From the NCBI RefSeq assembly GCF_006345805.1, contig NC_042997.1:22878001-22942000 (forward strand): a stretch of 64,000 nucleotides of DNA, in the 5' to 3' direction. The DNA comes from Octopus sinensis. Its lineage: Eukaryota. Positions 5,076 to 56,240 of this stretch are shown here, one piece after another (the stretch's first letter is position 1; every line of letters begins with the position of its first letter). The notes under the pieces are model-generated. The model was not told the origin of the DNA and ran no database searches. It was given only the letters and a program-made list of their open reading frames with translations. A program made the position numbers and the translations under genes.

Positions 5076-5749
5076 GCACTTTATTTATTTGTATATATTT
5101 GTTGATGCAGGCACAGCTGTGTAGTTAAGAAGTTCCTTTCTTAACATGGTTAGGGCCTCAGTCCGACTATATGAACATCGTTGGTTGGTGTTCTATACAA
5201 TAGCTGCATATATAATACTAACGTTTCTTTAATATTCCAAAATATTGAAAAAGGAGTTTTAAATAGATTTATTACACTTGCTATATGAAATGAATTGAAA
5301 AAGCTTTCACGTATTGGAATCAAAACAAAAGAGTAGATTCAAATGTGACCTTTGAACTTTATCCCTGTAAAGCCAATGTTAATCAGTTTGACTTTGATGT
5401 GACTGTACTTAAATAAGTTTACCCTTAATTTTGCTATTCAGTTTCTAAAAAGCACCCAGCATATTACGTAAAGTGGCTGGTGTTAGGAAGGACATAGAAA
5501 CCACAACAAACAACTGGTGTCTGTCCAGCTCCTGTCAAACCATCCAACCCATACCAGCTTGTTATTCAAATCTGGATATTTTATTAATTTTTTTCATATA
5601 GTTTTCAGGTTTTATTTTGAGCAGTAGACACTTAGGTTTTGGAAAAAAAAATTAATTTTAATTGAAAGTTTCTTTTTTAAATCATAATCTTAATAAACTC
5701 AAACACAGCATTTTAAATTTCCAGAAAGTAAAAAAAAATCAAAATTTAA

Positions 5750-26439: not shown

Positions 26440-27830
26440 TAAAGTGTTTTTCCCATGTACATAGGCTCCCAAAAGCATAAAAAAAATTTCCCAAACGTTT
26501 GAGTTCTAGGTAAATGAATTAGAACCTGCAATTATAAAGAATATAAGGGATAATGAAGGTAAGCCTATTGACATTTTCAAATTATGCTTTACTGAGGGAC
26601 ATATATGCAAAGAAACAGTTAAATATGCATCCCAAAAAGGAGATATACAATTTACTTTGTTGAAGATCTTTACAAATATTTTGGAATCCTTTTAAAAGAC
26701 TGTATTAGAAGACTCGTCCAGATGCAGATAACTTTCTAGTAAGCCATTCTATTAGTAGAAATAAATTTGAAAAGATTCGTCAATATATACTCTTCAATGA
26801 TAACATGACAATTGATCCTTGTGACAAAGTTTATAAAATTAGGCCTCTCCTAGACCATCTAAATGAGAAATTCTGTGAGTTCATTCTACCAATGGGTAAA
26901 ACTTTTTCTCTTGATAAGGCAATGGAGCCTTACTATGGGCACCATGGAATGGAGCAGTTTATAAGAGGAAAGCCAATCCATTATGGATTTAAGATTTGGT
27001 GTCTAACAACAGAGGGGTATTTGATTAGATTTTATCCATATACTGGTGCAGAAGACAAAGTGGCTGGAAAACCTCTTGGATCTTCAGTAACAGAAAGACT
27101 TTGTTGAGGTTTTGTACTTCAGGGTGCTTGCATCTTTATGGACAATTATTTCACTTCCTTACCTTTGATGCAGTCACTGTCAAGCACGCATGTTGGAACT
27201 ATCAGGAAAGACCGAATTGAGCAGGCACCTGCAGAGGATCTAAGTAATGCTCAGCGAGGTACATATTGTGCAGTTGAAGATCAAGCAAATGGAATTACTC
27301 TTGTTAGGTGGAATGATAATAACCAAGTTACTTTAGTTACAAATTCAAAAAACAGTTGGAAGTTGTTAGCAATGGAAGAAAACTGAAAGAAAGCACCTTA
27401 CTGTTCCACAACCCAATGTCACTAAGTTATACAACAAACGAATGGGAGGAATTTGATCTTTTTTATAAAATGAGAGGATATTACAGAATAAGAGTTAGAT
27501 AAAAAAAAAGTGGTATTGGCCTTTGTTTCACTTTTGTCTCAATGGGAGTATGGTGAATCTATAGATCTTGTACTGTCAAATTGAAAAGAACATTTCTCTC
27601 TTAGAATTCGCCAGACAAATTGTTATGACACTACTTGCTGCACCAGACTTAGGACCAAAGCAAGGAGTCCGTCCTAAAACAATGAAACAGTTAGATTTTA
27701 TGGTAAAAACCACTGGGTCAACAAAAATTATACACAGAGGTGTGCAGCATGCGAAAAATGTGCCAAGTTTGTATGTATCAAATGTAATGTTGGACTTCAT
27801 CCTGATATGTATCTTGTAGCTTACCATCAG
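26440..27830 (+). pseudogene. Fossil piggyBac (PGBD2/3-like) transposase
   Basis: DKVYKIRPLLDHLNEKF, SLDKAMEPYYGHHGMEQFIRGKPIHYGFKIWC, MDNYFTS, GTIRKDR, RWNDN, YNKRMGGI(D), KKWYWPLF. All three catalytic-Asp motifs are traceable but broken by stops and frameshifts; element ends not resolved. Confidence 0.92.
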
Positions 27831-34155: not shown

Positions 34156-34909
34156 TACAGATCTGGTGATAAAACAAAAACAAGTAAGAAAATATACTAA
34201 CTGCACTATATACAAAAGTACAACATCAAACAGACTGCTTTGTGGTAATTGTTCTGACTCTCTGTTCTCTGGGTTCAAATCCTGCCTGAGGCCAACTTAG
34301 CCATTCACTTCTTCAGAGTCAATAAAAAAAAAAGTACCTACCCAAGGCATTGGATTAGTGGAACTGTTATAACATCAAACCAGACCCCTTCTGGCATTTG
34401 TCCTGGCTTTTTGCATTCTGAGTTCATATCCCACCATGACCTACTTGGATGGTAGACTTAATCTACCACTTGCTTTATTAACATCACCATCTGGAACCTT
34501 GAATGCCTTTAGTGGGACCCATTCTGTTGCAAGCATTCAAACCTGATCTCTACGTCAAGGATACCTTCCTTCCTCAGACCAGTTTTGGAGACCTGATGTC
34601 ATGGGCTCTGTCTTCCCTCCTAATTACAAGATATAAAAAAAAAAACACTATTAAATGGCGGTGCCCCAGCATGGCCACAGCTCGTGAGCTGAAACTAGAA
34701 TCAATCAATCAATCATTACAATGCACAAAACTTCTCATTTCATTTTTAGACAGTTCTCTCAGTCTTCCTCTCAGATAAGCTATTTGGTGGTTGTTGTTGC
34801 TGTTGTATAGCTCTAGATTAGTTGATCAAGCAAACCTTGCAGTTACACTGCTCCCATATCTGCGATTGTGCAGCTGCTACACACACGGAAAATCTTGGTT
34901 ATTATCATC

Positions 34910-35180
34910 ATTTAACATCTGTTCTTCATGCTAGCATAGGTTTGATGGCTTGACATTAGTGGGCAAACCAGAAAACCGTGCCAAGCTCCAGTGTCTACTT
35001 TGGCACAGTTTCTATGAATGCAAGCCCTTCCTAACATCAACCACTTTAAAGATTGTGGGTGCTTTCCATTCTGTAAAGTGGCTGGCCTTAGGAAGGGTAT
35101 CTAGCTGTAGAAACTATGCCAAAGCATACTTTGGAACTTGGTGCAGTCCTTTGTCCATTCAACCTGTCTATTCAACCTAT
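34910..35180 (-). mobile_element. Family C RTE-tail copy (degraded, partly rearranged)
   Basis: catcatttaacatctgttcttcatgctagcatagg...cccttcctaacatcaaccact. Confidence 0.7.
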
Positions 35181-35544
35181 TCCACCCGACTGATTGGTAT
35201 AAAGTCTCTCATCAACACTCCACAGTTTCTGACCCACAGATGTAAAAGAAATGGTAACCTTCTTGAGTCATGGCAACTCATAACGGCTGGTTTCCAGGGC
35301 ATATAAATTCCCCGATCATGAGTCCAACACCTTAACCACTAAGCCATAGGGTTCAGGACAACTCAATACTGCCAACTTAACACCGCTGACTCAATGCCAA
35401 CACAAATCAACACCAGGAAAATTGATTAATGAATAATTTATTCATTTTTTAACATTATCAGGTACTTATAAATAAAAGGTGTTGATTGCCAACATTGGTA
35501 GAAAAATATGAATTCTTGGTATTCCTTCTTTGAATGGTTTAAAG

Positions 35545-36130
35545 CAGGGATGGGGAACCTGTGGCCTTAAGGCTGCATACAGCCTTCTGGGTTAACAAGT
35601 GCAGCCTTTGATGTAAATGTTAATATATATTTTTTAAGACTTTGATTTTCTTTGTCTATAGTTTTTATGCATAAATTTACAATACACACACATATATAGA
35701 TAAGAGGAAAAATAACTGTGTTCAGTAATATCACTCCCAGAAATTGGAAGCATTTTTCTATGAACCTAATGAATATAAACTTAAAGCAGCATGGCTATAA
35801 AGACAACATTTCCTTGTCAGTCATACCAGCCTAGTAGGAGTGAGTAGCCTCACGCATGATACGTGTAGAGTTTCTGTCTCGTATACCTCCTCACTGTGGT
35901 TTGTGCTAAGTACTACTCAATGACTTCACAAGTGATACATGCAGAGTTCTTGTCTCGTCTACCTCCTCGCTGTGGTCTGCACTACACGTGATTCAGTTAA
36001 TTGTAGTCGTGATTAAGTTCATAGTGACTTGTGAAATTATAAGTCTGAGTTAGTTATAGCCTCATTTGAAAGCGTACATTCACCAGTGCACGCGTTGTTT
36101 TGCAGATTTCCTTTTTGTTACTGAGACTTA
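35545..36130 (+). mobile_element. hAT (Charlie-like) left-end fragment with a 76-bp-period direct repeat
   Basis: CAGGGATGGGGAACCTGTGGCC terminus typical of hAT MITEs. tgatac..g.agagtt..tgtctcgt.tacctcctc.ctgtggt.tg at 35857 and 35933. No matching right end seen. Confidence 0.5.
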
Positions 36131-36527
36131 ATTAGTAACAATGATCGAATTCATTGCTGCTCTGTTAGGCCTACTGCACACTGTTCCAGATAAAACGGTC
36201 TTAGATAAGACATGATCAATCAGCATCCGAAATCTTGGAATCTTGGTCATGACTTTAGCAATTGTCATTGTTTTGATTGAAAACTGTCAATATTTGGCAT
36301 TATTTCTATATTAATTGGGTAATGATAAATAATAGTACTAATTACAGAAAAGAATATTACAAATCTAGATGATATTTATTCTTGAATGGTAGTGACAATT
36401 GCCAAATTCAAGACCAAGAATATGGTTTTGGATGCAGATTTATTATGGTCTTGTCTGAGATCATTTTTTCTGGGTTAGTGTGCAGCCAGCCTTACTAATT
36501 CATTATCAACCTTTTATTTTTTATCAG

Positions 36528-36653
36528 TATTCCAGGATAAAAACAATTTTCAAGAAGAAGAGCGCAGGAGTGCCATGGCACTCCCACGTTCTTCTTCTTC
36601 TTCTTCTTCTTCTTCTTCTACCAAGAGTTCACAACCACCTCAAACACACAAGA
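36528..36653 (+). other. Candidate 126-nt exon (xFQDKNNFQEEERRSAMALPR-S10-TKSSQPPQTHK), gene unknown
   Basis: Branch-like TACTAAT at ~36493, tract cttttattttttatcag|, donor A|gtaagc. Length is a multiple of 3; internal ATG in GCCATGG Kozak context. No homology recognised. Confidence 0.45.
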
Positions 36654-36902
36654 GTAAGCAAGAAAGATAGAAGTAGGTAGAAACAAGGAAAATACCACTT
36701 GTATTTGAACACTATGCAAATATTCTTTTAAAAAACTTTTCTTTTAATTTTTCCAAAATTTAATTGTTTTCCTTACTTACAGTTGAAAAAGTCTGAAACA
36801 GATACTGAAATGTTTCTTATAAAATTATTTTAGCATTTTCTACCTTGATTTGTTTTTCCATATATATCAACTCGTGTGTTCCTTTCCAACCTTCTACATA
36901 TA

Positions 36903-36989
36903 ACATCATCCTCATCATCATCATCACCACCACCACCACCACTGCCGCCGCCGCCGCCACCACCACCACTGCCGCCGCCGCCGCCGCCG

Positions 36990-37022
<33 letters not shown>

Positions 37023-37420
37023 TCATTGTTTAACGTCCGTTTTCCATGCTAGCATGGGTTGGAGGATTTGACAGAGGACTGGCGAACCAGATGGCTGCAC
37101 CAGGCTCCAATCTTGATCTGGCAGAGTTTCTACAGCTGAATGCCCTTCCTAACACCAACCACTCCAAGAGTGTAATGAGTGCTTTTACATGCTACCGGCA
37201 CAAGTGCCAGTCAGGCGGTACTGGCAACAGCCACGCTCAAATGGTGTTTTTTATGTGCCACCTGCACAGTAGCCATTCCAGCAGCACTGGCAATGATCTC
37301 GCTCAAATGTTTTTTCACGTGCCAGTAAGGTGACACTGGTAACGATCATACTTGAATGATGCTTTTTACGTGCCGCTCTGGCAACGATCACACTTGGATG
37401 GTGCTCTTAGCACTCCACTA
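36903..37420 (-). mobile_element. Family C RTE-tail copy with expanded CAT/CAC/CGC tail
   Basis: Compound trinucleotide run at 36903-37027 directly abuts gtttaacgtccgttttccatgctagcatgggttgg. Confidence 0.85.
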
Positions 37421-37484
37421 ACACTACATATATATCTCTCTCTCTTTGGGAGAGGCACAAGCACCTACATGCACATATACATAC

Positions 37485-37640
37485 ACGGCAGTAACTTTCG
37501 CCTACTGAATTCAATCACAAAGCTTTGGTCAGCTCGGGGCTATAGCAGAAGACACATGTCCAAATTCCCATGCAGTGGGACTGAACCCGAAACCACATAG
37601 CTGGGAAGCAAGCTCCCTAACCACACAGCCATGCCCACAT
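37485..37640 (-). mobile_element. SINE family A, 5' half
   Basis: cacaaagctttggtcagctcggggctatagcagaagacac...gggactgaacccg...ctaaccacacagccatgccc. Confidence 0.8.
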
Positions 37641-37949
37641 TTATATATATAATTATATCCTTTATAAATTACTTTTATTCAAATTTTAAAAGTTCTGCTT
37701 TTTCTTTTTTAATTCGAGCCATGTATTAAGATTAATCTTTTTATAATGTTATAAAACAAATAATTAAAAACAGATGAAGTTATACAACAAATAAATTATT
37801 TATTAATCAATTTTTCTGGTGTTGAGTTGTCTTAGTGTTGCATTGTGCTAATGTTGAGTTGTCCTGGCATTGAGTCGGCAATGTTGAGTTGTCAGTGGTG
37901 AGTTGTCTCTATTTGTAAGCCACATGCCCACCCACAGACGTACTGTATC

Positions 37950-45419: not shown

Positions 45420-46090
45420 GAGGGGTCTGGATGTGTGTATGTATAGGGTTGGTGTATGTATTAGTATGTATAAGGGTGTGTGTGTGTGTGTGTGTGGTGT
45501 ATGAGAGAGTATTAGTGCGTAAGATTGGTCTGGACGTGCGTATGTATGGGGTTGGTGTATGTATTAGTATGTATTAGTATGTATTAGTACGTATTGTATG
45601 TATAGGTGTGTGTGTGTGTTGTGAGAGAGTATATGTGAGTGTGCGTATGCGGGGTCTGGACGTGTGTATGTATAGGGTTGGTGTAAGTATTAGTATGTAC
45701 TAGTATGTATTAGTACGTATTAGTATGTATTAGTTGGTGTTTGTATTAGTATGGCACATCATATGTGATGTGATGTGTAAAGTCATGTGGTGTAGTGAGG
45801 AGAAGGGGAGGGGGAGAAGAGGGGGGGAGAAGGGGAGGGGAAGAAGAGGGGGAGGAGAAGGGGAGAGGAGAGGATGGGGGAGAAGGAAGGGGATGAGGGG
45901 ATGAAGGAGGAAAGAGGGAGAGGGGGAGAGAGAAGGGGAGAGAGGGAGTGAGGGAGCAGAGGGAAGGGGAAGAGGGAGGGAGAAAGAGGGAAGAAGGGAA
46001 GGGGAGTAGGGGTGAAAGGATGAAGGACTGAAGAAGTAGGGGTCGGGGGAGAAAGGATAGTGAGGAGGGGGGTGAGGTTAGATGAGGAGG
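45420..46090. repeat. Three ~110-125-bp tandem units plus a ~300-bp polypurine tract (Penelope 3' UTR)
   Basis: ggtctgga(t/c)gtg.gtatgtat.gggttggtgta.gtattagtatg at ~45421, 45527 and 45651; G/A-rich run at 45795-46090. Confidence 0.85.
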
Positions 46091-48109
46091 GGGGGAGAGT
46101 TGAGACCAAATGGCGTATAAGAGCGAAGAGAGAAGATTAATTCCTGTTCACGGCGCAAACGGGAATCCGGATGGCCTCTGTGTAAGGACAAACCGAACAC
46201 AGATAGGTGTTGCAAGGAGTGACCGGTGGAGCGGAAATGGCGTGAGACTGGTGTGTCGTTCGCAAGGTTGATGTCACGAAGGTGTTCCGCGAACCGGTCA
46301 GCCAAGCGGCGTCCCGTTTGTCCGATGTACAAGGAATTGCAGAGAGAGCAAAGATGCAATAGATAATATTGCTGGAGGTGCAGGTGAAGGAGTGATGATG
46401 GGATAGGGTCGATGGTGGGTGCTAGTGAGGCGGGTGGTGTTGGAGAGGTAAGGGCAAGTGCGGCAACGTGGGCGGGAGCAGGGGAACGAGCCGGGTTGGG
46501 AGGTAGGGTCAGGGAAGGAGCTATGGACCAAAAGGTCTCGAAGGTTGTGGGCTCGATTGAAAGAGGGGAGGGGTCGGTTAGGGAAGAGGTGTGAAGTGGA
46601 CGGGTCGGACTGGAGATGACGGAAAGCTCGAAGAATGGTGCGTTGGAGACGTAGGGTCGTGGGGTGGTAAGTGAGGGGAAAAGGGAGGCGGGAGACTACA
46701 GGGCGGGTTCGGGGAGAGAGAGCAGATACACGGTCCACGGACCGTGCTCTGGCAAGGGCGGTGTGGATAGTGTGAGGGGGTATCCACGTAGGGTGAAGTG
46801 GTGAGCCATACGTTGAGACTGAGTCTCAAAGTCATGGTCGTCACTACAGAGCCTACGTAGACGGAGGAATGGGAATAGGGGATGGAAAGCTTGGTGTGTT
46901 CTGGGTGGGAGGAAGAGAAGTTGAGGTATGAGTGTGAGTCTGTGTGTTTGTAGTGAATGGAGGTGGTAAGAGTGGAGTGAAGAATGCTAACCGAAATGTC
47001 GAGGAAGGAGACAGAGGTGTTGGAGATAGTGGAAGTGAAGTGGAGGGCTGGATGGAAAGATTGGACGAAAGAGAGGAAGGAATCTAGATGTTCGCGGGAG
47101 AGTGAGGTGGCACCGATAATGTCGTCAATATAACGACCATATAGTTCAGGAGTGGGACCAGTGAAATTAGAGAATATTTGGGCCTCAACATAGCCAACGA
47201 TATATATATATATATATACATACACATATATATGACAGGCTTCTTTCAGTTTCCGTCTACCAAATCCACTCACAAGGCATTGGTCAGCCTGGGGCTATAG
47301 CAGAAGACACTTGCCCAAGATGCCACGCAGTGGGACTGAACCCGGAAACATGTGGTTGGTAAGCAAGCTACTTACCACACAGCCACTCCTGCGCCTGCAT
47401 ATGTAATTTTTTATGCTGAATCTGAATTTGTTATACATTTATTCTAGAAAAATTTTGCAAAAATATTACAGGTGTTCAAAGTTTGATCTTTTTCAGAATT
47501 TTCAGCCAATCAGAAAACAGCAGGTTTACTACCTCTTCTATCATCGGGGAAGCGGGGGGCATCGACATGTCAAAACATTAAACTAGGAGTTTATAAAATA
47601 AATTATCTTTCTTGTATCCCCTTCTCCTCCTTGTGTGCATGCACAGTATCTTTGGCTACAGTTCTTCGCAATCAGCTATGCAACACATGGTGCTTCTTTG
47701 CTTTGGTGATATGTAAAAATACTTGCTTCTGATTGGCTAAAATACCCAAATTTTTCAAATTTTAAAGGCTAATAACTTTTTAATTATAGATTTATAGGAA
47801 AAATGAATTTCATTCTCATAATTAGTATGCAAAACCTAATCCATATTGCAAATTTAAAGATAACTGGAACAAACTGTAAGCAGTAACAAAAACCACAAAG
47901 ATCCAACAATCGTACTTGGAAAGGAAACAGGTGCTGCAATGTCATCTATTAACTGAAAAACCCTGCCATGCATATAGGTCACCTTAGATTATGGATTTTA
48001 CATTTATAATAAGGAATACACAACACACTAATCCTCTCCACCAACATACAACCTTCGACTAAAACTTTCACAAACCTTATAAATGTTAGTGATCACAATC
48101 TGTCTCAAC

Positions 48110-54479: not shown

Positions 54480-56240
54480 TAAGAGAGTCTGAAGGGTATC
54501 ACACTGGTTCACAAGGAAACAGAAATACCAAAATTACAGTTTCTTTGTGGATGACTTGAAACTATATTCCAAGAATATACATGAGATGAAAAAGAGCCTT
54601 GACCTGGTTACAACATTCTCAAATGATGTGGTTTACAACTTGGTCAAGATAAATGTTGCAATATATTATAGTGAAAAGAGGGAAAACGTTAACCAGACAA
54701 ACAGCATATCCATTAATGACTTAATTATTTCCCCTATATCTGATGAGGAATGTTACAGAGACCTAGGAGTGGATGAAAACATATCTTATGATAGCACCTG
54801 TAACAAGATCACTAAAGCATATTATAGCCGTATAAAGAATATATGGACCTTGGAACTCTCTGCATTCAATAAAGCAGTGAATCACAATGTATTTGCAGCA
54901 CCAGTATTCATACCAATATTTGGGCTACATGATTGGATGCTTTATGAGATCCAAGCTATTGATGTGAAAACCCGGAAGATACTAACCGGCACACAAAATT
55001 TCCACATCAACAGCGAAGTAGACCACCTCTATCTGAAAAGAAAACAAGGGTCAGAAGCTTAATATCAACCCAGACTGCCTTTGAATGTCATATCATTTAC
55101 CTTCAGTAACATCTTTTAACTACCAAGTGCATCCCTGGACAAAGTTTGCATACAATAAAGCTGATAACATCATGAGACTTGGAAAGCAGCTCCTTGAGCA
55201 GCATTCCTTGAATCCATGCCCAAAGAAGTTACATGACTCTACTGCAATGTATCATCAGATGAAATGATGAGCATATATCAACAGAACATGCATGGATATG
55301 TAAGCAAAAAGCTCTGGGATGATAGTAACATTGGTCATCAGAGCAGTCTATCATGGACCAATAACTGGATTACTAACTCCTACTTTGAAGGGTATGCATT
55401 TGAAACCCAGGAGCAGGAAATATCAACAAAATACCTGATGCAGAAAAGAGACAGAGACACATGTAAAGCATCACAATCTGATAACAGATGCTGACTTTGT
55501 GGAGTTAACACTAAAGATATCACCCACATCATAAGCAGTTGTCTGAAAATGTTGTCAAGGTATTATCTACCAATGAGACATTATGTTGTAGCTAAGGCAC
55601 TGTACAATGAGATCTGTCAGAAGGATAACCCTGAGGACAAAGAAATAAGAGCCCACAGTATTGCAGAAGCCATAGTCTATCATAAGAAGGAGTACTGGTG
55701 GAATGTCTCAGTGAAAAGCTCAATAAAATGAAAGCATAATAGATCTGACTCGGTGATTTGAGACAGAAAAGAGAAACTATGCACAGTTGTGAAAATCAGC
55801 TGCCCAGTGGATGTTAACATAAAGCTAAAGATTAAGGAAAAAGAAAATACCTATGCTGAACTATTTAGGTATCTACTAATATTTGACCCAGATTACAAGT
55901 TCAGGTTTATATCTGTAATTATTGGAGCACTGGGATATGTAACACATTGCTTAAGTACCAATCTTGAGAAATAAGGCTTATCGAAACCAGAAAGGAGAAA
56001 GCTGATCTGAAGACTACAGATCAAAGCCATCAATGGAACTGTAAAAATCTGTAAAACTTTCCAGAAGTTTATCATTCAAATATATATGCACATGTTAGAC
56101 ATGCAACTATATGCATGAAAATACATATAAAAAACAAAACATTCAAATCTGCACATATACTTATATGCAAATATACCTTGTCGATGTTGAAATTCCAATG
56201 AAGGAGCCTCATATCTAGATTAGAAACTCAGCTCTTTCTC
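54480..56240 (+). mobile_element. R4/Dong-like retrotransposon fragment (RT domain 5 onward, CCHC, RLE), copy 2, different subfamily
   Basis: FVDDLKLYSKN, YRDLGVDENI, LSAFNK...HNVFAAPV, FEGYAFETQEQEISTKYL, HIISSCLKM, KISCPVDVNIKLKIKEKENTY; many frameshifts and stops. Confidence 0.88.

What the first reader, a model, noticed from the sequence alone, without database searches (positions are those of the whole stretch)
35340..37924. Possible Pack-MULE-like element: a Mutator-type transposon enclosing an exon with its intron flanks
Seen: inverted arms made of GACAACTCAA units, and a 9-bp TSD (TAAGCCA[T/C]A) that appears to split a SINE-like head (...ccttaaccactaagcca|catgccc). Inside lie a hAT end, unique AT-rich sequence and a 126-nt exon-like segment with branch point, polypyrimidine tract and GTAAG donor; no transposase was seen. 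Established: MULEs make 9-bp TSDs, and Pack-MULEs capture genomic fragments with introns, mainly described in plants. Inference: this may be gene-fragment capture by a DNA transposon in an animal, or an exon born inside a MULE.
Basis: partly seen in the sequence, partly recalled or inferred. Interest (0 to 1): 0.72.

Follow-up and report, generated by a model that had tools for sequence, protein, structure and literature searches.

The report
Dead MULE transposon stuffed with other transposons
This is a real but ordinary Mutator-like DNA transposon relic in an octopus genome, and its "captured exon" is the seam between two other repeat fragments inside it, not a piece of a host gene.

Summary
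The structural observation holds. Window 35349-37915 is one element with about 100-nt imperfect inverted arms built from GACAACTCAA-type units. It is flanked by a 9-bp duplication (TAAGCCATA/TAAGCCACA) that splits the tRNA-like head of a SINE.

The element belongs to a low-copy family (about 30 ends in this 2.72-Gb genome). Other copies also have 9-bp duplications. The longer copies carry, between the same ends, decayed remains of a FLYWCH + MULE (PF10551) transposase. It is therefore a genuine non-autonomous Mutator-like element.

The Pack-MULE reading fails. All of the interior that is foreign to the family is repeat DNA:
- 35545-36553 is the first 1 kb of a hAT transposon. It starts at the hAT's exact terminus and is truncated at 36553.
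- 36574-36900 is the 5'-truncated 3' end of an abundant LINE-like retroposon, joined through a 24-nt palindrome.
- 36901-37026 is microsatellite.
- 37006-37640 is a SINE on the minus strand.

The "126-nt exon" (36528-36653) straddles the hAT/palindrome/(TTC)10/retroposon seam. No parental gene exists, and the junctions occur nowhere else in the genome. This is a nested transposon pile-up with at least one deletion. Interest is low.

Side note: the closest relative of the transposase lies in a mantis-shrimp assembly, about 80% identical at DNA level. That suggests possible horizontal transfer.

The parts
34892..35339 (-). Host SINE (minus strand), body and most of the tRNA-like head. This is the target into which the MULE inserted. 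The rest of the head continues at 37925 to about 37935.
   Evidence: It has internal similarity to the SINE at 37010-37163 (D4/D6). Paralogous heads span the rejoined flanks.
35340..35348 (.). Left copy of the 9-bp target-site duplication, TAAGCCATA.
   Evidence: Paralogous SINE heads carry this 9-mer once.
35349..35472 (-). MULE arm at the 'GGGTGCAG' end. This is the end downstream of the transposase gene in full-length relatives. It consists of the terminal GGGTTCAG followed by GACAACTCAA-type subterminal repeats.
   Evidence: It is 77-87% identical to the ends of at least 20 other loci. The terminus pattern has 28 genomic sites against 3 for the control.
35473..35544 (-). Short remnant of MULE internal sequence. 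It corresponds to the region just upstream of the transposase ORF in longer copies. About 1.5 kb of the full-length element, including the whole ORF, is deleted between 35472 and 35483.
   Evidence: 35483-35546 is 89-95% identical to L001, L002, L004, L005 and L013. It maps to positions 1663-1726 of the 2332-nt copy L001 and lies upstream of the open frame in L039.
35545..36553 (+). 5'-terminal 1 kb of a hAT transposon. It starts at the exact hAT terminus, CAGGGATGGGGAACC, and is truncated internally at 36549-36553. It carries a 76-nt tandem duplication at 35833-35984.
   Evidence: Copies at C3:58568572 (86%) and C7:29419322 (89%) continue past the 36553-equivalent position into an ORF. Copy L026 has an 8-bp TSD, TATTAGAC/CATTAGAC. 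Homologues of the ORF carry PF05699 and PF14291 and are named GTF2IRD2-like or FAM200B-like.
36552..36599 (.). Palindromic junction. 36552-36575 is an inverted copy (88%) of 36576-36599, the first bases of the retroposon fragment.
   Evidence: I7. The junction is unique in the genome: all other hits stop at 36549-36553.
36574..36900 (+). 5'-truncated 3' part of an abundant LINE-like retroposon, with a (TTC)10 run at 36589-36619.
   Evidence: Dozens of copies are 84-90% identical and share the same 3' end (...CAACCTTCTACA) followed by varying microsatellites. Their 5' ends vary, and some copies extend more than 680 nt further upstream.
36901..37026 (.). Compound microsatellite, (CAT)n(CAC)n(GCC)n. 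It represents the tails of the retroposon and/or of the minus-strand SINE.
37006..37640 (-). SINE on the minus strand. The tRNA-like head ends at about 37640, the body has 66-nt tandem units (37183-37314), and the tail is (ATG)n.
   Evidence: Head and tail modules match many copies in the window and in the fetched loci. No single contiguous copy of the whole length was seen, so it could be two adjacent SINE pieces.
37641..37915 (-). MULE arm at the 'CCTATTTG' end, upstream of the transposase gene in full-length relatives. It comprises internal sequence at 37641-37772, subterminal repeats at 37773-37907 and the terminal TCTATTTG.
   Evidence: It is 76-83% identical to the corresponding end of L001, L004, L005, L006, L013 and L018. 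Termini are compared.
37916..37924 (.). Right copy of the 9-bp target-site duplication, TAAGCCACA.
36528..36653 (+). It is a mosaic of the hAT fragment end, the palindrome, (TTC)10 and the start of the retroposon, not a gene fragment.

Best explanation
Window 35349-37915 is a dead, non-autonomous internal-deletion derivative of a FLYWCH-zinc-finger Mutator-like (MULE) DNA transposon.

Shown:
- It inserted as one unit into the tRNA-like head of a SINE and duplicated 9 bp of the target.
- Of the roughly 2.3-kb parent element, it keeps only the two arms and about 70 nt of the region upstream of the transposase gene.
- Its interior holds three other mobile-element pieces: the first 1 kb of a hAT transposon, a 5'-truncated LINE-like retroposon 3' end, and a SINE.
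- No host-gene sequence is present.
- The composite exists only at this locus.

Inferred:
- The transposase of an autonomous relative bound the GACAACTCAA-type subterminal repeats and made a 9-bp staggered cut.
- The loss of the transposase gene arose by abortive gap repair. Other short copies have different deletion breakpoints.
- The hAT entered by ordinary transposition, because the junction sits at its exact terminal nucleotide.
- A later deletion or break-repair event removed the rest of the hAT plus about 135-150 nt of MULE sequence. That event is associated with the retroposon fragment and its hairpin-like palindrome.
- The SINE retroposed next to the MULE's (AC)n/(TA)n tract.
- The locus has no function today.
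For: MULE identity:
- The arms and repeat units are significant.
- The family has about 30 ends in the genome.
- Termini are conserved: GGGTGCAGGACAACTCAAC...GAGTTGTCCCTATTTG.
- 9-bp TSDs match 9/9 in L004 and L018, 8/9 in the window copy and L002, and 7/9 in L003 and L006.
- Transposase remnants lie inside TIR-bounded copies L001, L003 and L005.
- A 370-aa open frame in L039 hits PF10551 at 31.2 bits, above the 27.6 cutoff.
- Relatives of about 470 aa carry PF10551 + PF04500.

Deletion derivative:
- The window copy maps to positions 1-124, 1663-1726 and 2082-2332 of L001.
- L002, L003 and L004 have other breakpoints.

Single insertion:
- The rejoined flanks equal a continuous paralogous SINE head.

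Interior is made of repeats:
- hAT fragment.
- Retroposon.
- SINE.

Junction uniqueness:
- Hits to the MULE side stop at 35546. Hits to the hAT side start at 35531-35545, the few bases before the 35545 terminus being chance flank similarity, and no hit covers both sides. Hits from the hAT side stop at 36549-36553.

Age:
- The window copy lies about 0.09 Jukes-Cantor (JC) distance from the family consensus over 143 sites.
Against: - The nested pieces do not show the clean signature of simple insertion. No TSD can be shown for the hAT, whose 3' end is missing, or for the retroposon and SINE, whose tails are microsatellite.
- About 135-150 nt of canonical MULE sequence is missing between the hAT and the SINE. 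At least one extra deletion must therefore be assumed, and the order of events is inferred.
- The genome search scores only the best candidates, so a diverged donor locus could be missed.
- No intact autonomous copy with both termini and an open transposase frame was recovered.
- L001 and L005 have poor TSDs (2/9 and 6/9).
Confidence: 0.85

Rival explanations
1. Pack-MULE-like capture: the MULE acquired a host gene fragment (an exon with intron flanks) and carries it between its arms.
For: The element has MULE arms, a 9-bp TSD and no transposase. Its interior differs from all other family copies examined. The segment 36528-36653 has splice-site-like letters.
Against: Every part of the foreign interior belongs to a repeat family. 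The 'exon' crosses the junction of two unrelated repeats plus a palindrome and a microsatellite. It has no Pfam hit and only low-complexity frames. No single-copy parental locus was found.
Confidence: 0.03
2. TE-fragment capture by template switching. During gap repair after excision, the MULE copied pieces of a hAT, a retroposon and a SINE as filler DNA (the Pack-MULE mechanism, but with repeats as cargo). It may then have transposed as a composite to this site.
For: The interior replaces, rather than merely interrupts, about 135-150 nt of canonical MULE sequence. The hAT and the retroposon are both truncated at internal positions. A palindromic junction suggests break repair (I7).
Against: The left junction coincides with the exact terminal nucleotide of the hAT, and the right junction with the near-complete 5' end of the SINE. 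That is expected for real insertions and unlikely for random template switches. No second copy of the composite, and no donor block, exists in the genome.
Confidence: 0.1
3. Two independent MULE fragments happen to flank older DNA, and the 9-bp repeat is a coincidence.
For: The outermost 8 nt of the two ends are not inverted repeats.
Against: The same asymmetric termini occur in paired form in many copies of about 1 kb with 9-bp TSDs. The two flanks rejoin into one continuous SINE head with the 9-mer present once. An 8/9 match at fixed positions has a chance probability of about 1e-4.
Confidence: 0.01

Closest known systems
Phantom-type / FLYWCH-bearing animal MULEs (Mutator superfamily; Dupeyron et al. 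2019, PMC6446971; Muta1 of Aedes aegypti, PMC5225508)
   Same: It has a 9-bp TSD, within the 8-11 bp range given for MULEs. The arms are long with repeated subterminal motifs. There is a single ORF with a FLYWCH finger plus the PF10551 MULE domain. Relatives occur in crustaceans, aphids and beetles.
   Different: No phylogeny was made, so the clade assignment is only by resemblance. The outermost 8 nt of the two ends are not inverted. All copies seen here are decayed.
Pack-MULEs of rice and other plants (Jiang et al. 2004, cited in PMC6446971; PMC5861414)
   Same: It has MULE ends, a 9-bp TSD, no transposase, and an interior unrelated to the autonomous element.
   Different: The cargo here is fragments of other transposable elements, not host gene fragments. 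No parental gene exists. The composite is single-copy. At least the hAT entered by its own terminus.
Internal-deletion derivatives of DNA transposons (for example maize Mu1 relative to MuDR, or Ds relative to Ac; from general knowledge)
   Same: Short copies share both ends with a longer transposase-bearing element and differ by copy-specific internal deletions.
   Different: The window copy additionally carries 2.1 kb of nested repeats.
Nested insertions in MULEs (maize and rice, PMC3903597)
   Same: Other transposable elements have inserted inside a MULE, inactivating and enlarging it.
   Different: Here the nesting is accompanied by loss of MULE and hAT sequence, so it is not a clean stack of insertions.

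Membership tests
Mutator-like elements (MULE superfamily) | Target-site duplication of 8-11 bp (typically 9) | tested here: met
   The window copy matches 8/9. L004 and L018 match 9/9, L002 8/9, and L003 and L006 7/9. The range is taken from PMC6446971.
Mutator-like elements (MULE superfamily) | Transposase with the MULE domain (PF10551) encoded between the same termini in related copies | tested here: met
   The L039 open frame scores 31.2 bits against a cutoff of 27.6. Remnants lie inside TIR-bounded L001, L003 and L005. Homologues carry PF10551 + PF04500.
Mutator-like elements (MULE superfamily) | Long terminal inverted repeats | tested here: inconclusive
   The arms are about 100-130 nt and 79-81% complementary through repeated 14-16-nt units. 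However, the outermost 8 nt differ between the ends in all copies. Non-TIR and imperfect-TIR MULEs are known.
Mutator-like elements (MULE superfamily) | Intact DDE catalytic residues / demonstrated transposition | not tested
   Only decayed copies were seen, and no alignment of catalytic residues was made.
Pack-MULE | MULE ends and TSD, no transposase | tested here: met
Pack-MULE | The interior contains fragment(s) of non-TE host gene(s) with a parental copy elsewhere in the genome | tested here: not met
   The interior consists of a hAT 5' kb, a LINE-like 3' end, microsatellite and a SINE. No parental gene or donor block was found.
hAT superfamily (nested fragment 35545-36553) | 8-bp TSD and short TIRs beginning CAG(G/A)G | tested here: met
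   Copy L026 883-2492 has TIRs CAGGGATGGGGAACC / AGTTCCCCATCTCTG and the TSD TATTAGAC/CATTAGAC. The window fragment lacks its 3' end, so its own TSD cannot be checked.
hAT superfamily (nested fragment 35545-36553) | Transposase with the hAT dimerisation domain (PF05699) | tested here: met
   Direct Pfam scans of decayed ORF pieces found nothing. Close database homologues of the ORF downstream of the same 5' region (81% identity and below) carry PF05699 and PF14291, and are named GTF2IRD2-like or FAM200B-like.
Non-LTR retroposon (fragment 36574-36900) | Common 3' end with a simple-repeat tail and variable 5' truncation among copies | tested here: met
Non-LTR retroposon (fragment 36574-36900) | Reverse transcriptase in full-length members | not tested
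   Upstream sequence beyond about 850 nt was not fetched.

The most novel reading that the evidence does not exclude
The foreign interior was not simply inserted. It may have been copied into the MULE by template switching during gap repair, which is the Pack-MULE mechanism acting in an animal with transposon fragments as cargo. Alternatively or in addition, the repeat mosaic at 36528-36653 may be used as an exon of a host transcript. Neither reading is excluded, because no sister-species orthologue and no RNA data could be consulted.
Probability: 0.1. Interest if true: 0.4.

Novelty: new member of a known kind. Interest (0 to 1): 0.12.

Why it matters
It matters little in itself. MULEs, including Mutator families in octopus genomes, are already catalogued (PMC13282606, PMC6446971), and nested transposons are routine in a genome that is about two-thirds repeats.

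The useful outcome is negative. There is no evidence here for Pack-MULE-type gene capture in an animal. The case also shows how a seam between repeats with a pyrimidine run and a GTAAG can mimic an exon.

Two by-products may be worth curating:
- a defined FLYWCH-MULE family with its termini, 9-bp TSD, an approximately 2.3-kb parent and 1-kb deletion derivatives;
- its about 80% DNA identity to a copy in a mantis-shrimp assembly, a candidate horizontal transfer between marine invertebrates.

Tried and rejected
- **Search for an autonomous copy.** Smaller fetches followed. L007, L008, L009 and L011 show no right end within 9 kb, so they are solo or truncated ends.
- **MULE domain in a decayed copy.** Pfam on a read-through of the decayed L009 transposase gave PF10551 just below cutoff (24.5 against 27.6 bits). 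This was superseded by the L039 open frame.
- **hAT domains.** Pfam on hAT ORF fragments and on a read-through of the L024 C-terminus gave no hAT domain. The question was resolved through database homologues.
- **tRNA test on SINE heads.** ARAGORN found no tRNA gene in the paralogous SINE heads. They are SINE heads, not tRNA genes.
- **hAT target-site consensus.** The hAT target consensus nTnnnnAn, recalled from memory rather than checked, fits the window's 8 nt upstream of the hAT (GTTTAAAG), but other copies fit poorly, so it was not used as evidence.
- **A first guess withdrawn.** I first took the 64-nt conserved piece (35483-35546) to encode part of the MULE domain. It maps upstream of the ORF.
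- **Whether 37006-37640 is one SINE or two.** No contiguous full-length paralogue was seen, so this is left open.
- **Protein database search of the 42-aa 'exon' translation.** Not run. It is low-complexity and the cost was not justified.
Full report
**Source.** The window is G000:C1:22878001-22942000 of a 2.72-Gb, 13,516-contig animal genome. Contig C10 is 105,892,736 bp. That is the length of the contig carrying a protein that NCBI names 'FAM200B-like [Octopus sinensis]'. The genome is therefore very probably the Octopus sinensis chromosome assembly. The SINEs seen are also octopus-like, judged from my own knowledge.

**Observation.**
- The arms are real. 35357-35422 pairs with 37842-37907 (66 nt, 79%) and 35392-35459 with 37773-37840 (68 nt, 81%).
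- GACAACTCAA occurs exactly four times in 64 kb, always in the arms, against 0.24 expected. The right arm is a 16-nt-period array.
- Comparison with other copies fixes the element ends at 35349 (GGGTTCAG|GACAACTCAA...) and 37915 (...GAGTTGTC|TCTATTTG).
- The family consensus is 5'-GGGTGCAGGACAACTCAAC...GAGTTGTCCCTATTTG-3'. The outer 8 nt are not inverted copies, a conserved asymmetry.
- The ends are immediately flanked by TAAGCCATA (35340-35348) and TAAGCCACA (37916-37924).

**Empty-site proxy.** No sister genome was available, so I rejoined the flanks with one TSD copy and searched the same genome.
- Many paralogous SINE heads match across the joint at 95-98% over 40 nt.
- Seven fetched examples read ...GATCATGAGTCCAACACC(C/T)TAACCACTAAGCCA(T/C/A)ATGCC(T/C)CCAC, with the 9-mer present once.
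- The element therefore arrived as one unit and duplicated 9 bp of a SINE head.

**Family and superfamily.**
- The left arm has 34 matches in the genome. Its 19-nt terminus has 28 sites at up to 2 mismatches, against 3 for the reversed control. This is a small family.
- Paired ends delimit copies of 0.9-1.1 kb (L002, L003, L004) and 2.3-2.7 kb (L001, L005).
- Nine-bp TSDs match 9/9 in L004 (TATAATATC) and L018 (TAAATCTAA), 8/9 in L002 and 7/9 in L003 and L006.
- On the strand opposite to the GGGTGCAG end, longer copies carry decayed coding sequence. A read-through from L009 hits PF10551 (MULE) at 24.5 bits.
- A six-frame search with that peptide finds same-family remnants (54-75% identical) inside TIR-bounded L001, L003 and L005. 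It also finds a 370-aa open frame in L039, and that frame scores 31.2 bits on PF10551, above the 27.6 cutoff.
- Database relatives of about 470 aa carry PF10551 + PF04500 (FLYWCH).
- This is a FLYWCH-MULE. It resembles the 'Phantom' group of Dupeyron et al., which has 8-10 bp TSDs, FLYWCH fingers and crustacean or arthropod hosts. Mutator families are already listed for O. vulgaris.

**The window copy as a deletion derivative.**
- Against the 2332-nt copy L001, the window copy keeps positions 1-124, 1663-1726 and 2082-2332.
- L002 lacks 327-1556, L004 lacks 457-1582 and L003 lacks 875-2107.
- The different breakpoints indicate independent internal deletions, as expected from abortive gap repair (inference).
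- The retained 64-nt piece (35483-35546) lies upstream of the ORF, so no transposase coding sequence remains.

**The interior.** A genome search with 35547-36900, followed by inspection of 14 fetched loci, shows the following.

(a) 35545-36553 is the 5' kb of a hAT.
- It starts at the exact terminus CAGGGATGGGGAACC.
- In L021, L022, L023, L026 and L027 the sequence continues past the 36553-equivalent position into an ORF (...ENGIFNEEWELQYF...).
- L026 shows an 8-bp TSD.
- ORF homologues carry PF05699 and PF14291.

(b) 36552-36575 is an inverted copy of 36576-36599.

(c) 36574-36900 belongs to a very abundant repeat.
- The query that contained it gave 2510 first-look candidates.
- It has a fixed 3' end followed by varying microsatellites.
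- Its 5' ends vary, and some copies extend at least 680 nt upstream. This is a 5'-truncated LINE-like retroposon.

(d) 36901-37026 is compound microsatellite.

(e) 37006-37640 is SINE sequence on the minus strand. Its head ends next to the MULE's ...TATATAATTATATCC.

**The 'exon'.**
- The segment 36528-36653 runs from the last 26 nt of the hAT fragment through the palindrome and (TTC)10 into the retroposon.
- Its pyrimidine tract is hAT 5'-region sequence shared by other hAT copies.
- Its GTAAG lies in the body of the retroposon fragment.
- It has no Pfam match, and its open frames are poly-Leu or poly-Ser.

**Capture or nesting?**
- The junctions are unique. Family hits stop at 35546. Hits to the hAT side start at 35531-35545, the few bases before the 35545 terminus being chance flank similarity, and none spans the joint.
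- All other hAT-side hits stop at 36549-36553.
- None of at least 20 MULE copies has this interior, and none of the hAT or retroposon copies lies in MULE arms.
- There is therefore no donor block and no amplification.
- The left junction is at the hAT's terminal base and the right junction at the near-complete SINE 5' end. Both argue for true insertions.
- However, about 135-150 nt of canonical MULE sequence (...ATCTAAATACC...CCGGAAC(AC)n) and the rest of the hAT are missing.
- At least one deletion or break-repair event must therefore be assumed, plausibly tied to the retroposon fragment and its palindrome. The order of events is inferred, not shown.

**Age.** Over 143 aligned sites of the right internal region, the window copy is 0.089 JC from the family majority consensus, and other copies are mostly 0.03-0.07. 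On the O. vulgaris calibration, where JC 0.09 is about 25 My, this is a relic some tens of millions of years old. This is a rough inference.

**Side finding.**
- The closest protein relative (69% identity) is annotated in the mantis shrimp Oratosquilla oratoria.
- Its contig, L047, is about 80% identical at DNA level over 1.5 kb to L001, L005, L009 and L039.
- That is as close as those copies are to each other. L047 also carries GACAACTCAA-type repeats.
- No other repeat of this window occurs in the 7 kb seen.
- This is a candidate horizontal transfer. Contamination is not excluded.

**Verdict.** The structure is real and is a MULE. The Pack-MULE and exon interpretation is not supported. It is an ordinary nested-transposon relic.

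Noticed in passing
L039:4189-5298 (-); L047:1663-3229 and 5591-5705: The closest relative of this MULE's transposase (69% aa) is in a mantis-shrimp (Oratosquilla oratoria) assembly. The DNA is about 80% identical over 1.5 kb, as close as the octopus copies are to one another. This is a candidate horizontal transfer, or contamination.
   Followed up: partly
window 35349-35356 and 37908-37915; ends of L001-L018: The outermost 8 nt of the two MULE ends (GGGTGCAG against the reverse complement CAAATAGG) are not inverted repeats. Each is nevertheless conserved across copies. Inverted symmetry only begins at GACAACTCA.
   Followed up: partly
L001:571-1050: In one family copy the 14-nt subterminal unit is expanded into a tandem array of some 30 units at one end. 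The number of units per arm varies widely between copies.
   Followed up: no
window 36552-36599: A near-perfect 24+24-nt palindrome sits exactly at the 5' junction of the truncated retroposon. The left arm is an inverted copy of the retroposon's first bases, a hairpin or fold-back repair scar (I7).
   Followed up: partly
window 35833-35984: There is a 76-nt tandem duplication inside the hAT fragment. Some genomic hAT copies have one unit and others have two.
   Followed up: no
window 26709-27107 (+): An open frame matches the piggyBac-type transposase domain PF13843 (E = 1.3e-22), a piggyBac remnant about 9 kb upstream.
   Followed up: partly
window 46078-47294 (-) and 54493-55062 (+): These long open frames look, by eye, like retroelement remains: a GIY-YIG-like motif LYIGQTGRRLADRFAEH, and reverse-transcriptase-like sequence. 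There was no Pfam hit at E <= 0.001.
   Followed up: partly
G000:C15:31193496-31194332 and about 100 other places: The genome holds more than 100 more distant (25-35% aa) MULE-like coding stretches. Some have long uninterrupted frames, for example 657 aa on C15, and could be active or domesticated MULEs.
   Followed up: no
L001 (C7:3790044-3794347), inside the MULE copy: Another family copy carries a nested SINE flanked by the direct repeat GAGACAAACATACC. This is an example of clean nesting in the same family.
   Followed up: no
This identifies the source genome.
   Followed up: partly
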